Below are positions 1,386 to 33,856 of a stretch of 64,000 bases of DNA, piece after piece (the stretch's first letter is position 1; every line of letters begins with the position of its first letter). Made by a program: the position numbers and the translations under genes. Location of the stretch: the sequence record MT028491.1, one strand, 5' to 3'. Under the pieces are notes generated by a model. It saw only the letters and a list, made by a program, of their open reading frames with translations, was not told the DNA's origin and ran no database searches.

Positions 1386-2279
1386 TCATGCGACATTGAC
1401 CTTATCAATTTCTTCACGCTTTGCGTTGATACGTTCAACGAAATCAAAATCAAGTGTGAAAACTTCCGCAAGATTGTCGATCACGAATTGCTGAAACCAG
1501 CCTTTGCATAGTTCTGTAGTGAATTTTGCAATACCAATTTCATAGATTTCTTGCGTGGTTTTGTTTGGCGTATTATAACGCTCATACGCAATCACCATGC
1601 ATTCTTCTTTGGCCATTCGAACCTGATCATCATGAGAAAGCTTTTCAAAAAGATCACGATCAATCTTAGCCAAATTCATATCATGCTTGCATTTCTCAAA
1701 TAGAGGCACGTCATGATATGCCACAATGCGATGAAGGGCATCATGGTCAAACTCACGCAAATTTTGTGCCGGTTTGAAGAAATGTTCATTTGGCTTGTTC
1801 AAATTGATTTTGGCAATGCGCAGCTTATGACGCTCATATGCTTCTTCGCCGCGCAATTTCTCAACTTCAAGAGCTACATCAGAAGGTTCATAATGATCCT
1901 TGAGAATTAGCCAATCCTTGAGGTTTTTGAGCGCATTTACTGGATATTTGATATGAGACTTTTTCATCGCAATCAAAATGTCCAATGGTGGAACGAATAG
2001 CATATATCCATTCACATACATAACCTCATTGGCTTCATTCATAATAATGCGAGAAGATTCACTTTCCGTAACATCGGCTTCCATCGTCAACCCATCAGGG
2101 AGTTTGATAAGATATTTGCCGGGAAACATAGAATGTTCTTTCACTTTTGCATTGCAAGAGTTGAGTAGAAATTCCAAATCGAATTTCGACATAATAACGT
2201 CAATATCTGCCGGTTCACGACCAAGATCAATCTTGTAATGTTTGATAATAGGAGTGGAACCAATAACTACAACTGGCAT
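1386..2279 (-). CDS. putative Pol-beta-superfamily nucleotidyltransferase-like phage protein
   Basis: N-terminal hhhGS...ADIDV (GS / DxD) motif. Confidence 0.55.
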   Translation of the reverse strand: MPVVVIGSTPIIKHYKIDLGREPADIDVIMSKFDLEFLLNSCNAKVKEHSMFPGKYLIKLPDGLTMEADVTESESSRIIMNEANEVMYVNGYMLFVPPLDILIAMKKSHIKYPVNALKNLKDWLILKDHYEPSDVALEVEKLRGEEAYERHKLRIAKINLNKPNEHFFKPAQNLREFDHDALHRIVAYHDVPLFEKCKHDMNLAKIDRDLFEKLSHDDQVRMAKEECMVIAYERYNTPNKTTQEIYEIGIAKFTTELCKGWFQQFVIDNLAEVFTLDFDFVERINAKREEIDKVNVA

Positions 2280-5871: not shown

Positions 5872-6050
5872 TTTTCTGTGTCATCCTTTCGGAAGATGGT
5901 TCCCTTTTCAAAGAACCAACAAACCCACGTAATAATCATCAAAATAAAAAAGATGAAACCTAAAAACTCAAACCCATTGGCATATGAAACAATAGCAATA
6001 ATTGCATTTAGAACAATACCAAGGATATACGAAAAATCATTAAAACTCAT
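5868..6050 (-). CDS. small membrane protein
   Basis: two hydrophobic segments; likely start MSFNDFSY after AAGGGA RBS. Confidence 0.6.
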   Translation of the reverse strand: MSFNDFSYILGIVLNAIIAIVSYANGFEFLGFIFFILMIITWVCWFFEKGTIFRKDDTEK

Positions 6051-6385
6051 AGTTCCCTTTCTTGAACAGCAAAAATAGCTGTTTCTTGATCCCAAGAAAG
6101 TCGGATACTTTCAATAGGGGTTACATAGTGAGGATAAGCATTGATAGTGTTTGGCTTATTATCAGACATGACACCAATTGAAATACAAGAAAGTTTAGCT
6201 GAATTGGCTTCTGAAATGTCCTTGTAAACGCCTATCGTTTTTGTGCCGGTTGGATACGTCACAGACAGAATATAGGCAATATCACCACTTTTAAACTCAT
6301 ATGGAGTTTGGTGATAACTTCTGTCTTGAGTGATAGCCGTATGAATAATTTCACCAGCCGAATTGTAATCTACCTTAATGAACAT
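6047..6385 (-). CDS. hypothetical protein
   Basis: 112-aa ORF. Confidence 0.6.
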   Translation of the reverse strand: MFIKVDYNSAGEIIHTAITQDRSYHQTPYEFKSGDIAYILSVTYPTGTKTIGVYKDISEANSAKLSCISIGVMSDNKPNTINAYPHYVTPIESIRLSWDQETAIFAVQEREL

Positions 6386-8155: not shown

Positions 8156-8349
8156 CAGTATGCAAAATCCTCAATTTGGGAACCAAAGTCAGAAGTTGTC
8201 ATGCCTTCAAAGAACGCGGTTCGCTTAGCCTTTGCAGCATCGCGGCGCTGGCGATGATCCTTGTCGCGGCGCTTGCTATTGCCACGCTTGTAATCACCTT
8301 CATCATCAAAATCGCGTTCAAAACGGCTGTACTTATACGACTTAGATAT
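8155..8349 (-). CDS. 64-aa highly charged protein with probable AUA start (not in ORF track)
   Basis: GGAG-8nt-ATA TCT AAG; SKSYKYSRFERDFDDEGDYKRG...FAY*; no in-frame ATG/GTG/TTG between the upstream TGA and the ATA; stop overlaps next ATG. Confidence 0.6.
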   Translation of the reverse strand: MSKSYKYSRFERDFDDEGDYKRGNSKRRDKDHRQRRDAAKAKRTAFFEGMTTSDFGSQIEDFAY

Positions 8350-8420
8350 TTCCCTATCTCCATTGGTTAGTTGTCTGTTTCAATCTGATAATTACGTTTT
8401 AGATTATGATAAAACTAATG

Positions 8421-17077: not shown

Positions 17078-17099
17078 TTAGATAATGTTTTGACACGAT

Positions 17100-17172
17100 T
17101 GACAACAACAGGGATCGAACCCATACATATCGTTTATCATACGACCGTTCTACCACATTAAACTATATCATC
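17100..17172 (-). pseudogene. degenerate tRNA-Ile(GAT)-like element inside a 22-bp inverted repeat
   Basis: D-like TAGTTTAATGTGGTAGAAC, anticodon arm GTCGT-ATGATAA-ACGAT, GGGTTCGATCCC T-arm; G:U-rich acceptor; no CCA. Confidence 0.6.
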
Positions 17173-17194
17173 AATCGTGGCAAAACATTATCAG

Positions 17195-17554
17195 TCAAGC
17201 ATCAATTGATATCATGCCTATAATTTTACCTGACAAGATCAACAATTGATTACAGGCATCATCATAATTCATATCAGCATATGTGTCTATCTTAAATTGT
17301 AGTTTCAATTCTTCTTGTGACAATTTCAAATATTCACAAATTAAACGTTCTGGAATACGCTGTTTCCTAATAAATTCGCCAAGATTGATTAATTCTCTTG
17401 ACAAACGGGAAAGTTGTTCTGCCCTTTCTGGATCATCTGGATAAAGGTCATTCCAAACTGTGTTATACCTTGCTTTAAACTTATAAAGTTTAAATGGCCT
17501 GACAGTCTGACCACTTGCAGATTGCAATGGTGTATAAACATTATTCCATTTCAT
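17195..17554 (-). CDS. hypothetical protein
   Basis: 119-aa ORF between tRNAs. Confidence 0.65.
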   Translation of the reverse strand: MKWNNVYTPLQSASGQTVRPFKLYKFKARYNTVWNDLYPDDPERAEQLSRLSRELINLGEFIRKQRIPERLICEYLKLSQEELKLQFKIDTYADMNYDDACNQLLILSGKIIGMISIDA

Positions 17555-30108: not shown

Positions 30109-30642
30109 TTATCTACCATGATTCTCATGAAAGTCAAACTGTTTTTCTGCATTTAGTCTAACTTGCACGGCTTCATCAAAGTTGGTATAAACACCCAAAT
30201 AGTGTTTAACACCATCAGAAGATATTTCCACTTTCCATTTATTTCTAGATTTAGAAATTCCTCTATGTCCAGAAGTATTATTAGAAAATGTCTTCATATT
30301 TTTATTATTTTCTAAACCACTAACATTTCTAAGATTAGACCATCTATTATCTGTTCTTATACCATTTATATGATCAATCACATCTGGCCATTCACCAGTC
30401 ACCAAAAACCATATCAGTCTATGACAGATGTATCGTTTATCAAAAATCTTAACAGTTATGTAACCACTGCCATTCACTGTTGATATTTTTTTACCAGCAA
30501 ATTTCTTATTCCAAGCACTACAATTAGCTTCGGATGAAGTATTACCAGCCGAAAACCATTTTACGTCTCTTGGTTTCCATTTACAAATTCCGGTTTCAGG
30601 ATTATAGTCTATAAACTCTTTTAATATCTCTTGTGTTAACAT
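30109..30642 (-). CDS. HNH endonuclease with AP2-like C-terminal domain
   Basis: CHRLIW..VIDHINGIRTDNRWSNLR..N; NTSGHRGIS..KWKVEI..KHYLGVYTNFDEAVQVR. Confidence 0.9.
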   Translation of the reverse strand: MLTQEILKEFIDYNPETGICKWKPRDVKWFSAGNTSSEANCSAWNKKFAGKKISTVNGSGYITVKIFDKRYICHRLIWFLVTGEWPDVIDHINGIRTDNRWSNLRNVSGLENNKNMKTFSNNTSGHRGISKSRNKWKVEISSDGVKHYLGVYTNFDEAVQVRLNAEKQFDFHENHGR

Positions 30643-30668
30643 TATATAAAAAAATAAAAATAATAAAA

Positions 30669-30744
30669 TGGAGCATCATCGGGGAATCAAACCCCGTTCC
30701 TCGCGTTGGAAGCGCGATATAATAAGTCAATATACGAATGATGC
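30669..30744 (-). tRNA. tRNA-Gly(TCC)
   Basis: TCGCG-CT-TCC-AA-CGCGA arm, U73-CCA. Confidence 0.9.
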
Positions 30745-30753
30745 ATCTATAAA

Positions 30754-30948
30754 CTATATACGCCTACTGATCAGAAAAACCGAGCTAGGGATTGCGCCTA
30801 GCACTTCTTCCCATGGCACCCAACATCCCCTATCGGGAATTGAAGGAATCGAACCCTCACAAGGTACTTGCGCTCTTCTACTTAAACTACCGGTCTGGTT
30901 CCAAAGTTAGCTATTCTTCTCACCGTAACGATCAATAGGCATATATAG
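30754..30948 (-). ncRNA. candidate ~195-nt ncRNA with two T-loop-like hairpins
   Basis: 19-bp closing helix with 2 G:U pairs on minus strand; GAGGG-TTCGATT-CCTTC and CTAGG-CGCAATC-CCTAG. Confidence 0.65.
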
Positions 30949-30951
30949 TTT

Positions 30952-31029
30952 TGGTGTCCATGGTCGGATTTGAACCGACACTTTACGAATTTTAAGTTCG
31001 TTGACTCTAACCAGTTGGCCTACATGGAC
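30952..31029 (-). tRNA. tRNA-Leu(TAA) with short variable loop
   Basis: ACGAA-CT-TAA-AA-TTCGT arm; 5-nt variable region; ACCA. Confidence 0.85.
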
Positions 31030-31081
31030 ATGATTTCATATCTAAATTAAATTCTTATAGTTGTCAACACGAAACCCGCAT

Positions 31082-31420
31082 TTAAACTTTATATTTCTGC
31101 ATTCTCTTACGCTTGTTAAGCTTCTCTTGTTTTTTCAACTTACGTAAGAAATCAGCCTTTTCTATGACTTCACCAAGACTATTAAACCTTTCGGCATGTT
31201 TAATGTAATCATATGTCCACCAATAGCCTTCATCTTTGCCTAATGATGAACCCCAATATTCTTTACCATTATTGAATATATTGGACCGAATCAGAAAGAA
31301 TTTTCCATTCTCATCTTCAATCGCATACATTTTCTTGTAAGCTAGAAAACAAATGAAAAGCAATGGTGATCCAAACACGATGAAAAACAAAACCAATACA
31401 GCTATAACATCTGCCATCAC
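31082..31420 (-). CDS. membrane-anchored hypothetical protein
   Basis: N-terminal TM helix; paralog-like to next ORF. Confidence 0.65.
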   Translation of the reverse strand: MMADVIAVLVLFFIVFGSPLLFICFLAYKKMYAIEDENGKFFLIRSNIFNNGKEYWGSSLGKDEGYWWTYDYIKHAERFNSLGEVIEKADFLRKLKKQEKLNKRKRMQKYKV

Positions 31421-31823: not shown

Positions 31824-31833
31824 AAATAATTCT

Positions 31834-31977
31834 TTCTACAGGCGGGAATCGAACCCATTTTCAGCGTGTACGTTGCTTACTTTGTTAAACCACATCCTAT
31901 AAGGATATGAAGCCTTCCTTAAGCCTGACACATGCTTAACTAGTCGCACATGAAAGGCCCGTTTAACGCCTGCAAAA
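31834..31977 (-). ncRNA. ~140-nt RNA with acceptor-like stem and T-arm but expanded core
   Basis: TTTTGCAGGC/GCCTGTAGAA closing helix, GGGTTCGATTCCC T-arm, internal hairpins; no CCA. Confidence 0.6.
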
Positions 31978-31978
31978 C

Positions 31979-32069
31979 TGGAAGAAGGTGTGGGATTTGA
32001 ACCCACGGAATGCTATTAACACCCTTCGGTTTTCAAAACCGATGCAATCGACCGCTCTGCCAACCTTCC
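31979..32069 (-). tRNA. tRNA-Ser(TGA)
   Basis: TCGGT-TT-TGA-AA-ACCGA arm, long variable arm; G1:U72, U73. Confidence 0.88.
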
Positions 32070-32929: not shown

Positions 32930-33555
32930 GTTACTAGCACAGTCTCGCGAAGCTTTGACCCTATGTAGTAGATTTGTTTAGTCTTAGTTTAGTCTAGTTT
33001 TGTATAATACTAAAATCAGGATAGCTTTTCGATGTTATGCAAAAACAGTTTTTGGTTGCTGCTTCTATCCTAAAGTTCATTGCGTATTGCAATGATGAAA
33101 CGACTTACCGGAATACCGGTTCCAGCTAGTTACGAGGCTGTTAATCTCGCTTGATTTTGGATAGGATCAAGAATAACCTAACTTTTATTTAATAGAAATG
33201 GGAAATGTTAAACCCACCTTGGCATCCAGCTTCAAAGTCCGAAGACTCCACTGTGTTGCTCTCTCTATGATTTTAATCTTTAGAGTTTGCAGCGTGCATT
33301 CCAATTTCTTAATGTTGGTAACTTCAAATCAATCCGAAGATATTCTTTCCAAAGGCCATCCCATTAAGAAACGCAAGTCGTTTCATCATTGCAATATTTC
33401 AGGAAGCATTTCGGCTTGTTTTTTTCAAATAAAAATGCTTGTTAGGTTTGCTGTTAGCTTCCTAATATTGCCAATTTAATAAAACTACTGGAAACATTTG
33501 AGTGTTTATAACCGAAACTTTTTGAGTTGCTGTTAGTTTCCAAAAACGTTTTATC
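32930..33555 (-). ncRNA. candidate large structured ncRNA / leader of the tRNA operon
   Basis: perfect 22-bp helix 33085-33106/33375-33396 with nested stems; directly downstream of tandem promoters; no credible ORF. Confidence 0.55.
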
Positions 33556-33559
33556 AAAC

Positions 33560-33597
33560 TATTTATATATTCTATTCTCTATTTAGTATAAAGTCAA
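33560..33597 (-). promoter_or_regulatory. tandem sigma70-type and late promoters for the RNA array
   Basis: TTGACT-N17-TAGAAT (33569-33597) followed by TATAAATA (33560-33567). Confidence 0.8.
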
Positions 33598-33856
33598 CAA
33601 CTTTTTTTAACTTTTTACTATTTTTTTTGTTTATTTTTACGGAAAGCATTTTGGTTTGTATTTGGAAACAAATTTTTTATGTTTGCTGTTAGCTTTCCAA
33701 AGCTTGTTAGGTGGACTCCCATCTGCAAAGGGGCATCTTGGGGGGCTTTGATGTTTTGCAGACAGGAGTCCTCACTGATATCTAACCTTTCGGTTATCAA
33801 TCAGCTTGAAAGAAACCTTCAATTTAGAAGAACTCTTTAAAACTGATTATGTTTAG

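What the first reader, a model, noticed from the sequence alone, without database searches (positions are those of the whole stretch)
30754..30948. 195-nt ncRNA with a 19-bp closing helix and two T-loop-type hairpins
Seen: the 5' and 3' ends pair over 19 bp. The two deviations are G:U on the minus strand but would be C:A on plus, which supports selection at the RNA level on the minus strand. Inside are GAGGG-UUCGAUU-CCUUC (canonical T-loop) and CUAGG-CGCAAUC-CCUAG. Established: paired T-loops form tRNA-elbow-binding platforms in RNase P, T-box RNAs and the L1 stalk. Inference: a tRNA-binding or tRNA-mimicking RNA.
Basis: partly seen in the sequence, partly recalled or inferred. Interest (0 to 1): 0.68.

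Follow-up and report, generated by a model that had tools for sequence, protein, structure and literature searches.

The report
Phage tRNA look-alike in a stalk
An unannotated 200-base stretch between two tRNA genes of a giant Ochrobactrum phage is built from tRNA parts and clamped by a real 22-base-pair helix, so it is probably a small non-decoding tRNA look-alike, but nobody has shown that it is made or what it does.

Summary
The window is Ochrobactrum phage vB_OspM_OC, a T4-like jumbo phage. The element fills the unannotated spacer between tRNA-Leu(UAA) and tRNA-Gly(UCC) on the minus strand.

The terminal helix is real. It is 22 bp with two G:U pairs, and it is one of only three such long-range helices in 64 kb. 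All three lie in the tRNA cluster.

One hairpin is a canonical tRNA T arm. It stacks on a GAUA-capped, acceptor-like hairpin, which gives the topology of Y-RNA-like (YrlA) mimics and of permuted tRNAs. The second "T-loop" (CGCAAUC) is not a T-loop. It looks more like a disabled tRNA-Leu(CAA) anticodon arm.

The interior folds no better than shuffled sequence. No Rfam family matches. No homologue turned up in the phage, IMG/VR, JGI or GTDB collections.

Wastewater runs hold the element alone at about 98% identity, with unlike flanks. Close relatives of the phage lack it, so it is an accessory cassette.

The phage also encodes a Ro60-like protein and three "CUAACAGCAAAC" handle hairpins. This element lacks that handle. 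The scan has noted handle-bearing permuted tRNA mimics on other phage DNA.

Best reading: a tRNA-derived, non-decoding RNA inside a processing or protective stalk. A decayed tRNA remnant is a serious rival.

The parts
30746..30951 (-). Whole element: the complete spacer between the encoded CCA end of tRNA-Leu(UAA) and the 5' end of tRNA-Gly(UCC)
   Evidence: the gap is unannotated; wastewater contigs match exactly this span at about 98% and diverge on both sides.
30930..30951 (-). P1, 5' arm of the 22-bp closing helix
30751..30772 (-). P1, 3' arm of the 22-bp closing helix (two G:U pairs on this strand)
30921..30929 (-). 9-nt one-sided bulge GUUACGGUG between P1 and P2
30913..30920 (-). P2, 5' strand (AGAAGAAU)
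   Evidence: pairing probability about 0.5
30773..30780 (-). P2, 3' strand (GUUUUUCU). Together with hairpin 2 it is also flagged as terminator-like.
30893..30903 (-). P3, 5' strand (predicted; 3+3+3 bp with two A:G mismatches)
   Evidence: probability 0.45-0.65. Not supported by the one natural variant seen.
30814..30824 (-). P3, 3' strand, also readable as a D-loop-like GUUGGGUG. G133 (30819) is U in the wastewater variant.
30863..30891 (-). Hairpin A, in the position of a variable or anticodon arm, just before the T arm
   Evidence: Its 3' strand plus the variable loop and T arm align with phage tRNA-Val.
30841..30859 (-). Canonical T arm (U-GAGGG-UUCGAUU-CCUUC-A)
30825..30840 (-). Acceptor-like hairpin AUUCCC-GAUA-GGGGAU, which starts with no spacer after the T arm
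   Evidence: probability about 0.9
30784..30802 (-). Hairpin 2, GCUAGG-CGCAAUC-CCUAGC. It resembles an anticodon arm (CAA) but has G33 and U37.
   Evidence: Ungapped 25/39 alignment with the D and anticodon arms of the phage tRNA-Leu(CAA).
30952..31029 (-). Upstream neighbour tRNA-Leu(UAA), with encoded CCA
30669..30744 (-). Downstream neighbour tRNA-Gly(UCC)
31069..31084 (-). Stop codon of p272 plus an 11-nt remnant of a tRNA-Gly 5' end. This marks the left edge of a 335-nt block (tRNA-Leu plus element) that close relatives lack.

Best explanation
The element is a discrete, accessory RNA cassette in the phage tRNA operon. It is built from tRNA parts but cannot decode.

Shown:
- It occupies the whole spacer between two tRNA genes on their strand.
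- Its ends form a 22-bp helix, one of three such leader-trailer helices in this operon. Another of the three brackets a normal tRNA-Ile.
- Its core has a canonical T arm stacked on a GAUA-capped, acceptor-like hairpin. This order (closing stem, extra hairpin, T arm, capped acceptor) is that of bacterial YrlA Y RNAs and of circularly permuted tRNA genes.
- No D arm and no usable anticodon loop follow the capped hairpin.

Inferred:
- It is transcribed with the tRNAs and cut free by the tRNA-processing cuts at its borders.
- The long helix is a host RNase III site or an exonuclease-proof clamp.
- The released RNA acts as a tRNA look-alike. It could be a decoy or ligand for proteins that read the T arm and acceptor minihelix: RNase P, TruB or TrmA, tRNA-targeting defence nucleases, or the phage's own Ro60-like protein p153.
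For: Position, strand and the absence of any annotation.

Helix. It is non-random and confined to the tRNA cluster. The tRNA-Ile stalk is shown.

T arm. T arm plus capped hairpin form a 12-bp stack with pairing probability 0.75-0.9.

Same topology elsewhere: YrlA (PMC4201824). Genuine permuted tRNA genes in IMG/VR locus L134 are called tRNA-Cys and tRNA-Thr by ARAGORN once un-permuted.

tRNA ancestry: the variable loop plus T arm align 21/26 with phage tRNA-Val. Nt 131-170 align ungapped 25/39 with the D and anticodon arms of phage tRNA-Leu(CAA).

Module behaviour: wastewater contigs carry 30746-30951 at about 98% with unlike flanks. Relatives that share p272 at 95% go straight from p272 to tRNA-Gly.

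The phage encodes a Ro60-like DUF2828+DUF7788 protein and T4-type RNA ligase 1 plus polynucleotide kinase.
Against: - There is no evidence of a transcript. The two runs labelled RNA-Seq are probably DNA.
- The interior is no more stable than shuffles.
- No diverged homologue exists in the searched collections, so no covariation test was possible.
- A match of 6/7 or better between an acceptor 3' strand and downstream sequence after a T arm is common by chance: 147 cases in 2.3 Mb.
- ARAGORN does not call the un-permuted sequence at its default threshold. The sub-threshold call is matched by 13-40% of shuffles.
- The tRNA-Leu alignment has p of about 0.03 before correction for 28 comparisons.
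- The one visible natural variant (G133 to U) would break a predicted P3 pair.
- The element lacks both the YrlA GNCGAA motif and the CUAACAGCAAAC handle present three times elsewhere in this phage.
Confidence: 0.45

Rival explanations
1. Decayed tRNA remnant. The interior is what is left of one or two duplicated tRNA genes, a tRNA-Leu(CAA)-like copy among them. The genes have lost the D stem, U33 and R37. Only the flanking helix still works, as a processing stalk that removes a useless spacer. The RNA has no function of its own.
For: - The interior fold is not better than shuffles.
- The D stem is reduced to two wobble pairs, and the loop CGCAAUC lacks U33 and a purine at 37.
- At a very relaxed threshold ARAGORN draws a poor cloverleaf over nt 48-119.
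- Segments 31-45 and 140-154 are 11/15 identical direct repeats (read).
- Close relatives do without the element.
- Other disabled tRNA copies were noted in this cluster.
Against: - A 22-bp helix does not arise by decay (0.03 expected per 20 kb).
- The T arm is flawless.
- The unit is kept at about 98% in a different context.
- Phage genomes seldom keep 200 nt of junk.
Confidence: 0.3
2. A true Y RNA. The closing stem binds the phage Ro60-like protein p153, and the tRNA-like module recruits a partner, as YrlA does with Rsr.
For: - The phage encodes p153. The depositors annotated it as Ro sixty-related, and it carries DUF2828 plus a vWA-like DUF7788 domain.
- The element has the YrlA order: stem, extra hairpin, T arm, capped acceptor hairpin.
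Against: - No hit to the Rfam YrlA model at E <= 10.
- No GNCGAA motif and no D arm.
- The gene lies 48 kb from p153.
- The phage has three hairpins with the CUAACAGCAAAC handle. Earlier scan notes tie that handle to DUF2828 proteins, and this element has no match within 2 mismatches.
Confidence: 0.12
3. A DNA-level mobile unit: a MITE-like insertion bounded by 22-bp terminal inverted repeats, or a cassette moved by the neighbouring HNH homing endonuclease. Under this reading the RNA fold is incidental.
For: - Similarity in other samples starts and stops at the repeat ends.
- The element is present or absent among close relatives.
- An HNH endonuclease gene lies just beyond tRNA-Gly.
Against: - The element is single copy in the phage.
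- No copy was found in GTDB genomes or IMG/VR.
- No target-site duplication is visible at the repeat ends (read).
- The indel in relatives spans tRNA-Leu plus the element, not the element alone.
- Both mismatches in the helix are G:U on the transcribed strand.
- The repeat ends coincide with the tRNA gene borders, so any shuffling of the array would give the same edges.
Confidence: 0.08
4. One reading: two T-loops interlock into a platform that binds the elbow of a tRNA, as in T-box stem I, RNase P or the L1 stalk.
For: One canonical T-loop is present. A second 7-nt loop with A at positions 4 and 5 exists.
Against: - The second loop begins with C and lacks the T-loop signature.
- The two loops sit in different branches about 45 nt apart.
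- No T-box or RNase P model matches.
- The canonical loop sits in an ordinary tRNA-type T arm, stacked on an acceptor-like helix.
Confidence: 0.04
5. A working circularly permuted tRNA gene. The ends would be cut in the stalk and joined by the phage RNA ligase 1, and RNase P would open the cap to give a tRNA-Leu(CAA).
For: - The 3' half (T arm, acceptor 3' strand, G73 plus 3 nt) precedes the 5' half (acceptor 5' strand, GG-containing stretch, CAA hairpin).
- Real permuted tRNAs with leader-trailer helices exist in other phage contigs.
- The phage has Rnl1 and Pnk.
Against: - ARAGORN does not call any un-permuted join at its default threshold, and weaker calls are at chance level.
- G33, U37 and a missing D stem rule out decoding.
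- 53 extra nt lie before the T arm.
- The phage already has a normal tRNA-Leu(CAA).
Confidence: 0.03

Closest known systems
Bacterial and mycobacteriophage YrlA Y RNAs (Rfam YrlA; Chen et al. 2014, PMC4201824)
   Same: The 5' and 3' ends pair into a stem. Inside come an optional extra hairpin, a canonical T arm, then an acceptor-like stem closed by a loop. Both are tRNA-derived and non-decoding. The genome also encodes a Ro60-like protein.
   Different: This element has no D arm, no GNCGAA motif and no Rfam hit. It is not next to the Ro-like gene, which is DUF2828 type and not TROVE. The closing helix is far longer (22+8 bp), and an extra anticodon-arm-like hairpin is present.
Circularly permuted tRNA genes (Cyanidioschyzon and green algae, from my own knowledge; phage examples seen here in IMG/VR locus L134)
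   Same: The T arm and acceptor 3' strand come first, then a short cap, then the acceptor 5' strand. A leader-trailer helix closes the unit.
   Different: The L134 genes become standard tRNA-Cys and tRNA-Thr when un-permuted. This element does not: it lacks a D stem, U33 and R37, and it carries 53 extra nt.
Phage T4 species 1 RNA (rnaC), a stable RNA of unknown function at the end of the T4 tRNA cluster
   Same: Both are unexplained stable-RNA-type genes in the tRNA cluster of a T4-like phage, and both carry a canonical T arm.
   Different: In rnaC the T arm sits at the 3' end and the 5' and 3' ends form an ordinary open acceptor stem. Here the T arm is internal, the acceptor is capped, and the ends form a 22-bp helix. 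There is no sequence similarity.
RNase III processing stalks (rRNA operon leader-trailer helices, 23S intervening sequences of Rhizobiales, phage T7 sites; from my own knowledge)
   Same: A perfect or near-perfect helix of about two turns forms between sequences flanking an RNA that is to be excised from a polycistronic precursor.
   Different: Cleavage has not been shown here, and what the stalk encloses is a tRNA-like RNA.
'Handle' RNAs (stem followed by unpaired ACAGCAA) that earlier scan notes link to DUF2828 Ro60-like proteins
   Same: Same phage, same operon region. Both have a closing stem and payloads that imitate tRNA parts. I saw the motif independently in L089, L110 and L131 and three times in this window.
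   Different: This element has no match to CUAACAGCAAAC within 2 mismatches.

Membership tests
YrlA / bacterial Y RNA | Match to the Rfam YrlA covariance model | tested here: not met
   cmscan of 30600-31100 at E <= 10 lists no Y RNA family. The gathering-threshold scan of the window gives only tRNAs.
YrlA / bacterial Y RNA | Encoded within a few kb of a Ro60 (TROVE) gene on the same strand | tested here: not met
   No TROVE match in the phage. A Ro60-like DUF2828 protein exists, but 48 kb away.
YrlA / bacterial Y RNA | GNCGAAN0-1G motif near the 5' end | tested here: not met
   Not present in the first 60 nt (read; motif taken).
YrlA / bacterial Y RNA | Conserved T stem-loop followed by an acceptor-like stem-loop | tested here: met
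YrlA / bacterial Y RNA | Conserved D stem-loop after the acceptor-like stem-loop | tested here: not met
   Only a GG-containing stretch with no D stem of its own.
Circularly permuted tRNA gene | The 3' half (T arm, acceptor 3' strand) lies upstream of the 5' half, and the two acceptor strands are complementary | tested here: met
   AAUUCCC / GGGGAUG pair at 6 of 7 positions, separated by a 4-nt cap. Matches of this kind are common by chance.
Circularly permuted tRNA gene | The re-joined sequence is a standard tRNA | tested here: not met
   No ARAGORN call at the default threshold for any of about 800 joins. The positive controls from L134 are called. Calls at relaxed thresholds are no better than shuffles.
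tRNA (Rfam RF00005) | Score at or above the 29-bit gathering threshold | tested here: not met
   18 bits, E = 0.51, covering only the acceptor and T arm. ARAGORN finds nothing, with or without introns.
tmRNA, including two-piece permuted forms | Detection by ARAGORN or Rfam; G3:U70 pair; tag reading frame | tested here: not met
   No tmRNA call. No Rfam hit. The G:U pair is at 4:69, and there is no Ala-rich tag frame (read).
Interdigitated double T-loop platform (T-box stem I, RNase P, L1 stalk) | Two T-loop motifs, each with a U:A-type 1-5 pair, placed head to tail | tested here: not met
   The second loop, CGCAAUC, has C at position 1. No T-box or RNase P model matches. The three-dimensional arrangement cannot be tested with these tools.
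ACAGCAA-handle RNAs linked to DUF2828 proteins (scan-internal family, unpublished) | Stem followed by unpaired (CUA)ACAGCAA(AC) | tested here: not met
   Three copies in the window at 33446, 33525 and 33681. None falls in 30746-30951 at up to 2 mismatches.
RNase III processing stalk | About 20 bp or more of near-perfect helix between leader and trailer of an excised RNA | tested here: met
   22 bp. Part of a set of three in the operon.
RNase III processing stalk | Cleavage by RNase III | not testable with these tools
   Needs an in vitro cleavage assay or a host rnc mutant.

The most novel reading that the evidence does not exclude
The RNA is a new type of phage Y-RNA-like tRNA mimic. After excision at its stalk it would present a capped T-arm/acceptor minihelix. 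That minihelix could do one of two things. It could tether the phage Ro60-like protein p153 to tRNA-handling enzymes. Or RNase P could open it into a two-piece, CCA-tailed tRNA-like molecule, as happens with M. smegmatis YrlA and with alpha-proteobacterial two-piece tmRNA. In either form it could divert host tRNA-directed defence or quality control during infection.
Probability: 0.15. Interest if true: 0.72.

Novelty: new variant of a known kind. Interest (0 to 1): 0.42.

Why it matters
Large phages carry many tRNA genes, and unannotated tRNA look-alikes are increasingly seen among them. Their roles are open: decoys against tRNA-cutting defences, partners of Ro60-like proteins, or aids to processing.

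This phage offers a compact test case in one tRNA operon that can be manipulated genetically. It has a Ro60-like protein, three handle RNAs, RNA ligase 1 with polynucleotide kinase, three long leader-trailer helices, and this tRNA-derived cassette.

If the RNA is made and stable, it would extend the YrlA design to a form without a D arm or the known Ro-binding motif. If it is only a decaying tRNA duplicate inside a processing stalk, it still shows how tRNA arrays are remodelled cassette by cassette.

Tried and rejected
**Homologue searches, all negative**
- blastn with word size 11 against 50,697 phage records found only the phage itself and tRNA matches.
- Five IMG/VR pattern scans gave chance hits or ordinary tRNAs only (loci inspected).
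- Two JGI metagenome scans found nothing.
- One GTDB genome scan found nothing.
- A second genome scan used the CcrM-like protein to reach a host genome and test for host Ro60. It found nothing, so the host Rsr question is untested.
- The flanking ORF p272 has no relatives in IMG/VR or in the 5.8-billion-protein set. Flanking ORFs have no PHROG.
- tblastn with the helicase shows no phage above 40% identity, so synteny-based retrieval is impossible.
- A single-sequence covariance model was run over 24 large IMG/VR phage records. It gave only T-arm-level hits, plus two leads that proved to be a permuted tRNA-Cys and an odd long tRNA.

**Readings rejected**
- tmRNA, intron-containing tRNA, mitochondrial-type tRNA.
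- A multi-copy repeat within the phage.
- Sequence relationship between the three stalks.
- A small ORF: only 20-24-codon frames exist.
- RtcB.

**Leads shown to be weak**
- The terminator-like call on hairpin 2 is within chance (3 found against 1.2 +/- 1.1 expected).
- The sub-threshold ARAGORN call of 'tRNA-Leu(CAA)' for the un-permuted sequence is not significant.
- The supplement of PMC4201824 is not held.

Full report
**Identity and context.** The window is Ochrobactrum phage vB_OspM_OC (MT028491.1; record coordinate = window coordinate + 124000). It is a 227.7-kb T4-like jumbo phage from sewage (PMC7139368). On the minus strand the window carries a cluster of more than 22 tRNA genes between about 17 and 33 kb. 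The finding lies in an unannotated 207-nt gap. tRNA-Leu(UAA), with an encoded CCA, ends at 30952. tRNA-Gly(UCC) starts at 30744. The element therefore fills the whole spacer.

**The observation.** The closing helix is real and slightly longer than reported. Arms 30930-30951 and 30751-30772 give 22 bp with two deviations. Both deviations are G:U on the minus strand, and every pair has probability 0.77-1.0 in the ensemble. The minus-strand RNA folds to -73.6 kcal/mol against -52.1 for the plus strand. The whole element has z = -4.8 against dinucleotide shuffles.

I counted inverted repeats with at least 20 of 22 Watson-Crick matches within 450 nt. The 64-kb window has exactly three, all inside the tRNA cluster, against 0.03 per 20 kb in shuffles.
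- One brackets a normal tRNA-Ile(GAU) and continues its acceptor stem (17081-17192).
- One encloses 268 nt upstream of the array (33085-33396).
- The third is this element.

Long leader-trailer helices are thus a feature of this operon. The G:U argument for RNA-level selection is only mildly informative. If mismatches arise by transitions, each has about an even chance of being G:U on the transcribed strand.

**The two hairpins.** Both named hairpins exist. GAGGG-UUCGAUU-CCUUC carries all T-arm invariants, and the Rfam tRNA model aligns it. CUAGG-CGCAAUC-CCUAG is a 6-bp hairpin with a 7-nt loop. The loop begins with C, so it lacks the 1-5 U:A-type pair of a T-loop. 'Two T-loops' is half right.

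One caution matters for everything below. Without P1 the interior (30773-30929) folds no better than shuffles (z = -0.12). The thermodynamic signal is the terminal helix alone.

**Anatomy.** RNA numbering is 1 = 30951. The minimum-free-energy fold and a fold 1.3 kcal/mol above it give this order:
- P1 (1-22 with 180-201).
- A 9-nt one-sided bulge.
- P2 (32-39 with 172-179).
- A junction that carries hairpin 2 (150-168) and a domain closed by P3 (49-59 with 128-138; 3+3+3 bp with two A:G mismatches).
- Inside P3, a four-way junction of hairpin A (61-89), the T arm (93-111) and, with no spacer, AUUCCC-GAUA-GGGGAU (112-127).

Counted as in tRNA, the T stem (5 bp) plus this hairpin (6 pairs and a G:A at 7:66) make a 12-bp coaxial stack. 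That is the length of a tRNA acceptor/T minihelix. The cap is N73 (a G) plus three nucleotides.

The order 'closing stem, extra hairpin, T arm, capped acceptor-like hairpin' is the order described for bacterial YrlA Y RNAs (PMC4201824). It is also the order of circularly permuted tRNA genes.

**Signs of tRNA ancestry.**
- The 3' strand of hairpin A, the 4-5-nt connector and the T arm align 21/26 with the anticodon-stem end, variable loop and T arm of the phage's tRNA-Val.
- Nt 131-170 align without gaps, 25/39, with the D arm and anticodon arm of the phage's tRNA-Leu(CAA). The shared features include the GG of the D loop, the CUAG/CUAG anticodon stem and the CAA triplet.
- That alignment has p of about 0.03 for the pair, before correction for 28 tRNAs tried. 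It is suggestive, not proof.
- The loop has G at position 33 and U at 37, and the D stem is reduced to two wobble pairs. The RNA cannot decode.

**Controls that cut the claim down.** I un-permuted the sequence (acceptor 5' strand onward, joined to the T-arm half) in about 800 registers. ARAGORN calls none at its default threshold. The same procedure turns two elements of IMG/VR locus L134 into clean tRNA-Cys(GCA) and tRNA-Thr(UGU). A call of 'tRNA-Leu(CAA)' at 85-90% of the threshold is matched by 13-40% of constructs whose middle part was shuffled, so I discard it. Complementarity of 6/7 or better between the seven bases after a T arm and a nearby downstream heptamer is also frequent: 147 cases in 2.3 Mb of phage tRNA regions, mostly tandem tRNAs. 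The capped hairpin alone therefore proves little. What counts is the combination with a flawless T arm, zero spacer and a stable tetraloop hairpin (probability about 0.9).

**Known families.** Rfam has no match at gathering thresholds. At E <= 10 there is only an 18-bit partial tRNA hit over the T arm and a weak alternative acceptor pairing. ARAGORN finds no tRNA, intron-containing tRNA, mitochondrial-type tRNA or tmRNA. T4 species 1 RNA (rnaC) also has a canonical T arm, but with an open acceptor stem formed by its ends. This phage has an rnaC-like RNA elsewhere (31834-31977).

**Relatives and module behaviour.** No diverged homologue was found by blastn, pattern scans of IMG/VR, JGI metagenomes and GTDB genomes, or a single-sequence covariance model run over 24 large phage records. 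The phage itself is a singleton: its helicase has no match above 40% identity, and its neighbouring ORFs are orphans.

Public runs did give two informative facts.
- In two wastewater libraries (X3, X4; labelled RNA-Seq but probably DNA), contigs match 30746-30951 at about 98%. They become unlike the window on both sides, exactly at the borders of the element. The rest of the 2.4-kb stretch is not covered by that organism. One shared difference is visible, 30819 C>A, which is G133 to U. It would break a predicted P3 pair but keeps a GG in the D-loop-like GUUGGGUG.
- In two other samples (X1, X6), contigs 95-97% identical over the upstream ORFs p272 and p273 leave the window at 31069. Their next 30 bases align 38/47 with the start of the window's tRNA-Gly.

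In those close relatives p272 is therefore followed directly by a tRNA-Gly. In vB_OspM_OC an 11-nt remnant of that tRNA (31069-31079) is followed by a 335-nt block, which holds tRNA-Leu(UAA) and the element, and then by a second tRNA-Gly. The element is accessory, and it travels as a unit in tRNA arrays. An HNH endonuclease gene lies just past tRNA-Gly. By analogy with SegB in the T4 tRNA cluster (my own knowledge), homing-driven cassette exchange is a plausible route.

**Possible partners in the phage.** Pfam TROVE is absent. The record does annotate p153 (record 105819-107222) as a Ro sixty-related protein by HHpred. It carries DUF2828 plus a vWA-like DUF7788 domain, the same two-part layout as Ro60. 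Earlier notes of this scan (unchecked AI notes) link DUF2828 proteins to small RNAs that have a stem followed by unpaired ACAGCAA. I had seen that motif independently next to permuted tRNA-like units in IMG/VR loci L089, L110 and L131. I then found three hairpins with CUAACAGCAA(A)C at 33446, 33525 and 33681 of this window. The present element has no such motif within two mismatches, and it has no YrlA GNCGAA motif. It is therefore not a member of either Ro-linked family as defined, though its architecture is alike. The phage also has T4-type RNA ligase 1 and polynucleotide kinase but no RtcB.

**Most likely mechanism.**
- Shown: a discrete, accessory, tRNA-derived cassette on the tRNA strand, bounded by a non-random 22-bp helix, with a canonical T arm stacked on a capped acceptor-like hairpin and no decoding parts.
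- Inferred: co-transcription with the flanking tRNAs; release by RNase P at the tRNA-Gly 5' end and by 3' processing of tRNA-Leu; and use of the helix as an RNase III site or a clamp against exonucleases. The helix around tRNA-Ile must be resolved in the same way before that tRNA can mature.
- More speculative: the released RNA acts as a tRNA look-alike for T-arm or minihelix readers (RNase P, TruB or TrmA, defence nucleases, or p153).

I put 0.45 on this package. The main rival, at 0.30, is a decaying duplicate of tRNA genes that survives only as a spacer inside a processing stalk.

**Verdict.** The element is a new variant of the tRNA-mimic kind, with YrlA-like topology but no family membership. 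Interest is moderate. Expression, processing and partners are all untested, and the absence of diverged homologues blocks covariation analysis.

Noticed in passing
window 33398-33712 (-): motif at 33446-33457, 33525-33536, 33681-33692: Three short hairpins upstream of the tRNA array. In each, a GGAA-rich stem is followed by unpaired CUAACAGCAA(A)C. This is the same 'handle' I saw next to permuted tRNA-like units in IMG/VR loci L089, L110 and L131. They are likely partners of the phage Ro60-like protein.
   Followed up: partly
Outside the window: MT028491.1 105819-107222 (locus L146:2820-4223, -): p153 is annotated by the depositors as Ro sixty-related. Pfam gives DUF2828 plus DUF7788 (vWA-like). 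The Pfam TROVE model does not detect it.
   Followed up: partly
window 17078-17195 (-): A second tRNA-Ile(GAU) gene whose leader and trailer pair over about 21 bp, directly continuing the acceptor stem into a helix of about 28 bp. RNase P could not reach its 5' end until the stalk is resolved.
   Followed up: partly
window 33085-33396 (-): A perfect 22-bp long-range helix that extends further in the fold and encloses 268 nt, just downstream of the handle hairpins. It is the third member of the set of operon stalks.
   Followed up: partly
L134 (IMGVR_UViG_3300045988_037736), about 1478-1600 and 1738-1860 (+): Two circularly permuted tRNA genes: T arm and acceptor 3' strand, then a 6-10-nt cap, then the acceptor 5' strand, D arm and anticodon arm. 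ARAGORN calls them tRNA-Cys(GCA) and tRNA-Thr(UGU) only after un-permuting. Each has a leader-trailer helix. The motif ACUUACAAUACUA recurs four times in the locus.
   Followed up: partly
L110 about 8230-8350 (+); L089 about 5990-6130 (+); L131 about 8230-8400 (+); L048 (-) about 1850-2000: More capped-acceptor tRNA-like units in IMG/VR phage contigs, with different break points. L110 opens between the D and anticodon arms. L048 has a YrlA-like order: stem, T arm, capped acceptor, D arm, stem. Three of them carry ACAGCAAAC right after the 5' strand of the closing helix.
   Followed up: partly
window 31069-31084 and 30734-30749 (-): An imperfect 16-nt direct repeat (11/16): the stop codon of p272 plus a tRNA-Gly 5' remnant, against the start of the intact tRNA-Gly. 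It flanks a 335-nt block (tRNA-Leu(UAA) plus the element) that is missing in relatives seen in runs X1 and X6.
   Followed up: yes
window 31826-31980 (-): A roughly 140-nt RNA with an open acceptor-like stem and a canonical T arm but a long branched core (z = -3.9). It resembles T4 species 1 RNA (rnaC) in layout. Its hairpin before the T arm aligns with hairpin A of the present element (z = 4.3).
   Followed up: partly
Outside the window: MT028491.1 83112-85515: T4-like RNA ligase 1 and two polynucleotide kinase genes, which form a tRNA repair set. This suggests the phage meets anticodon nucleases in its host.
   Followed up: no
L139 1508-1598 (+) (IMGVR_UViG_3300034024_000020): A roughly 92-nt tRNA-like gene with a 7-bp acceptor stem, T arm and ACCA end, but with two long hairpins in place of the D and anticodon arms. 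ARAGORN does not call it.
   Followed up: no
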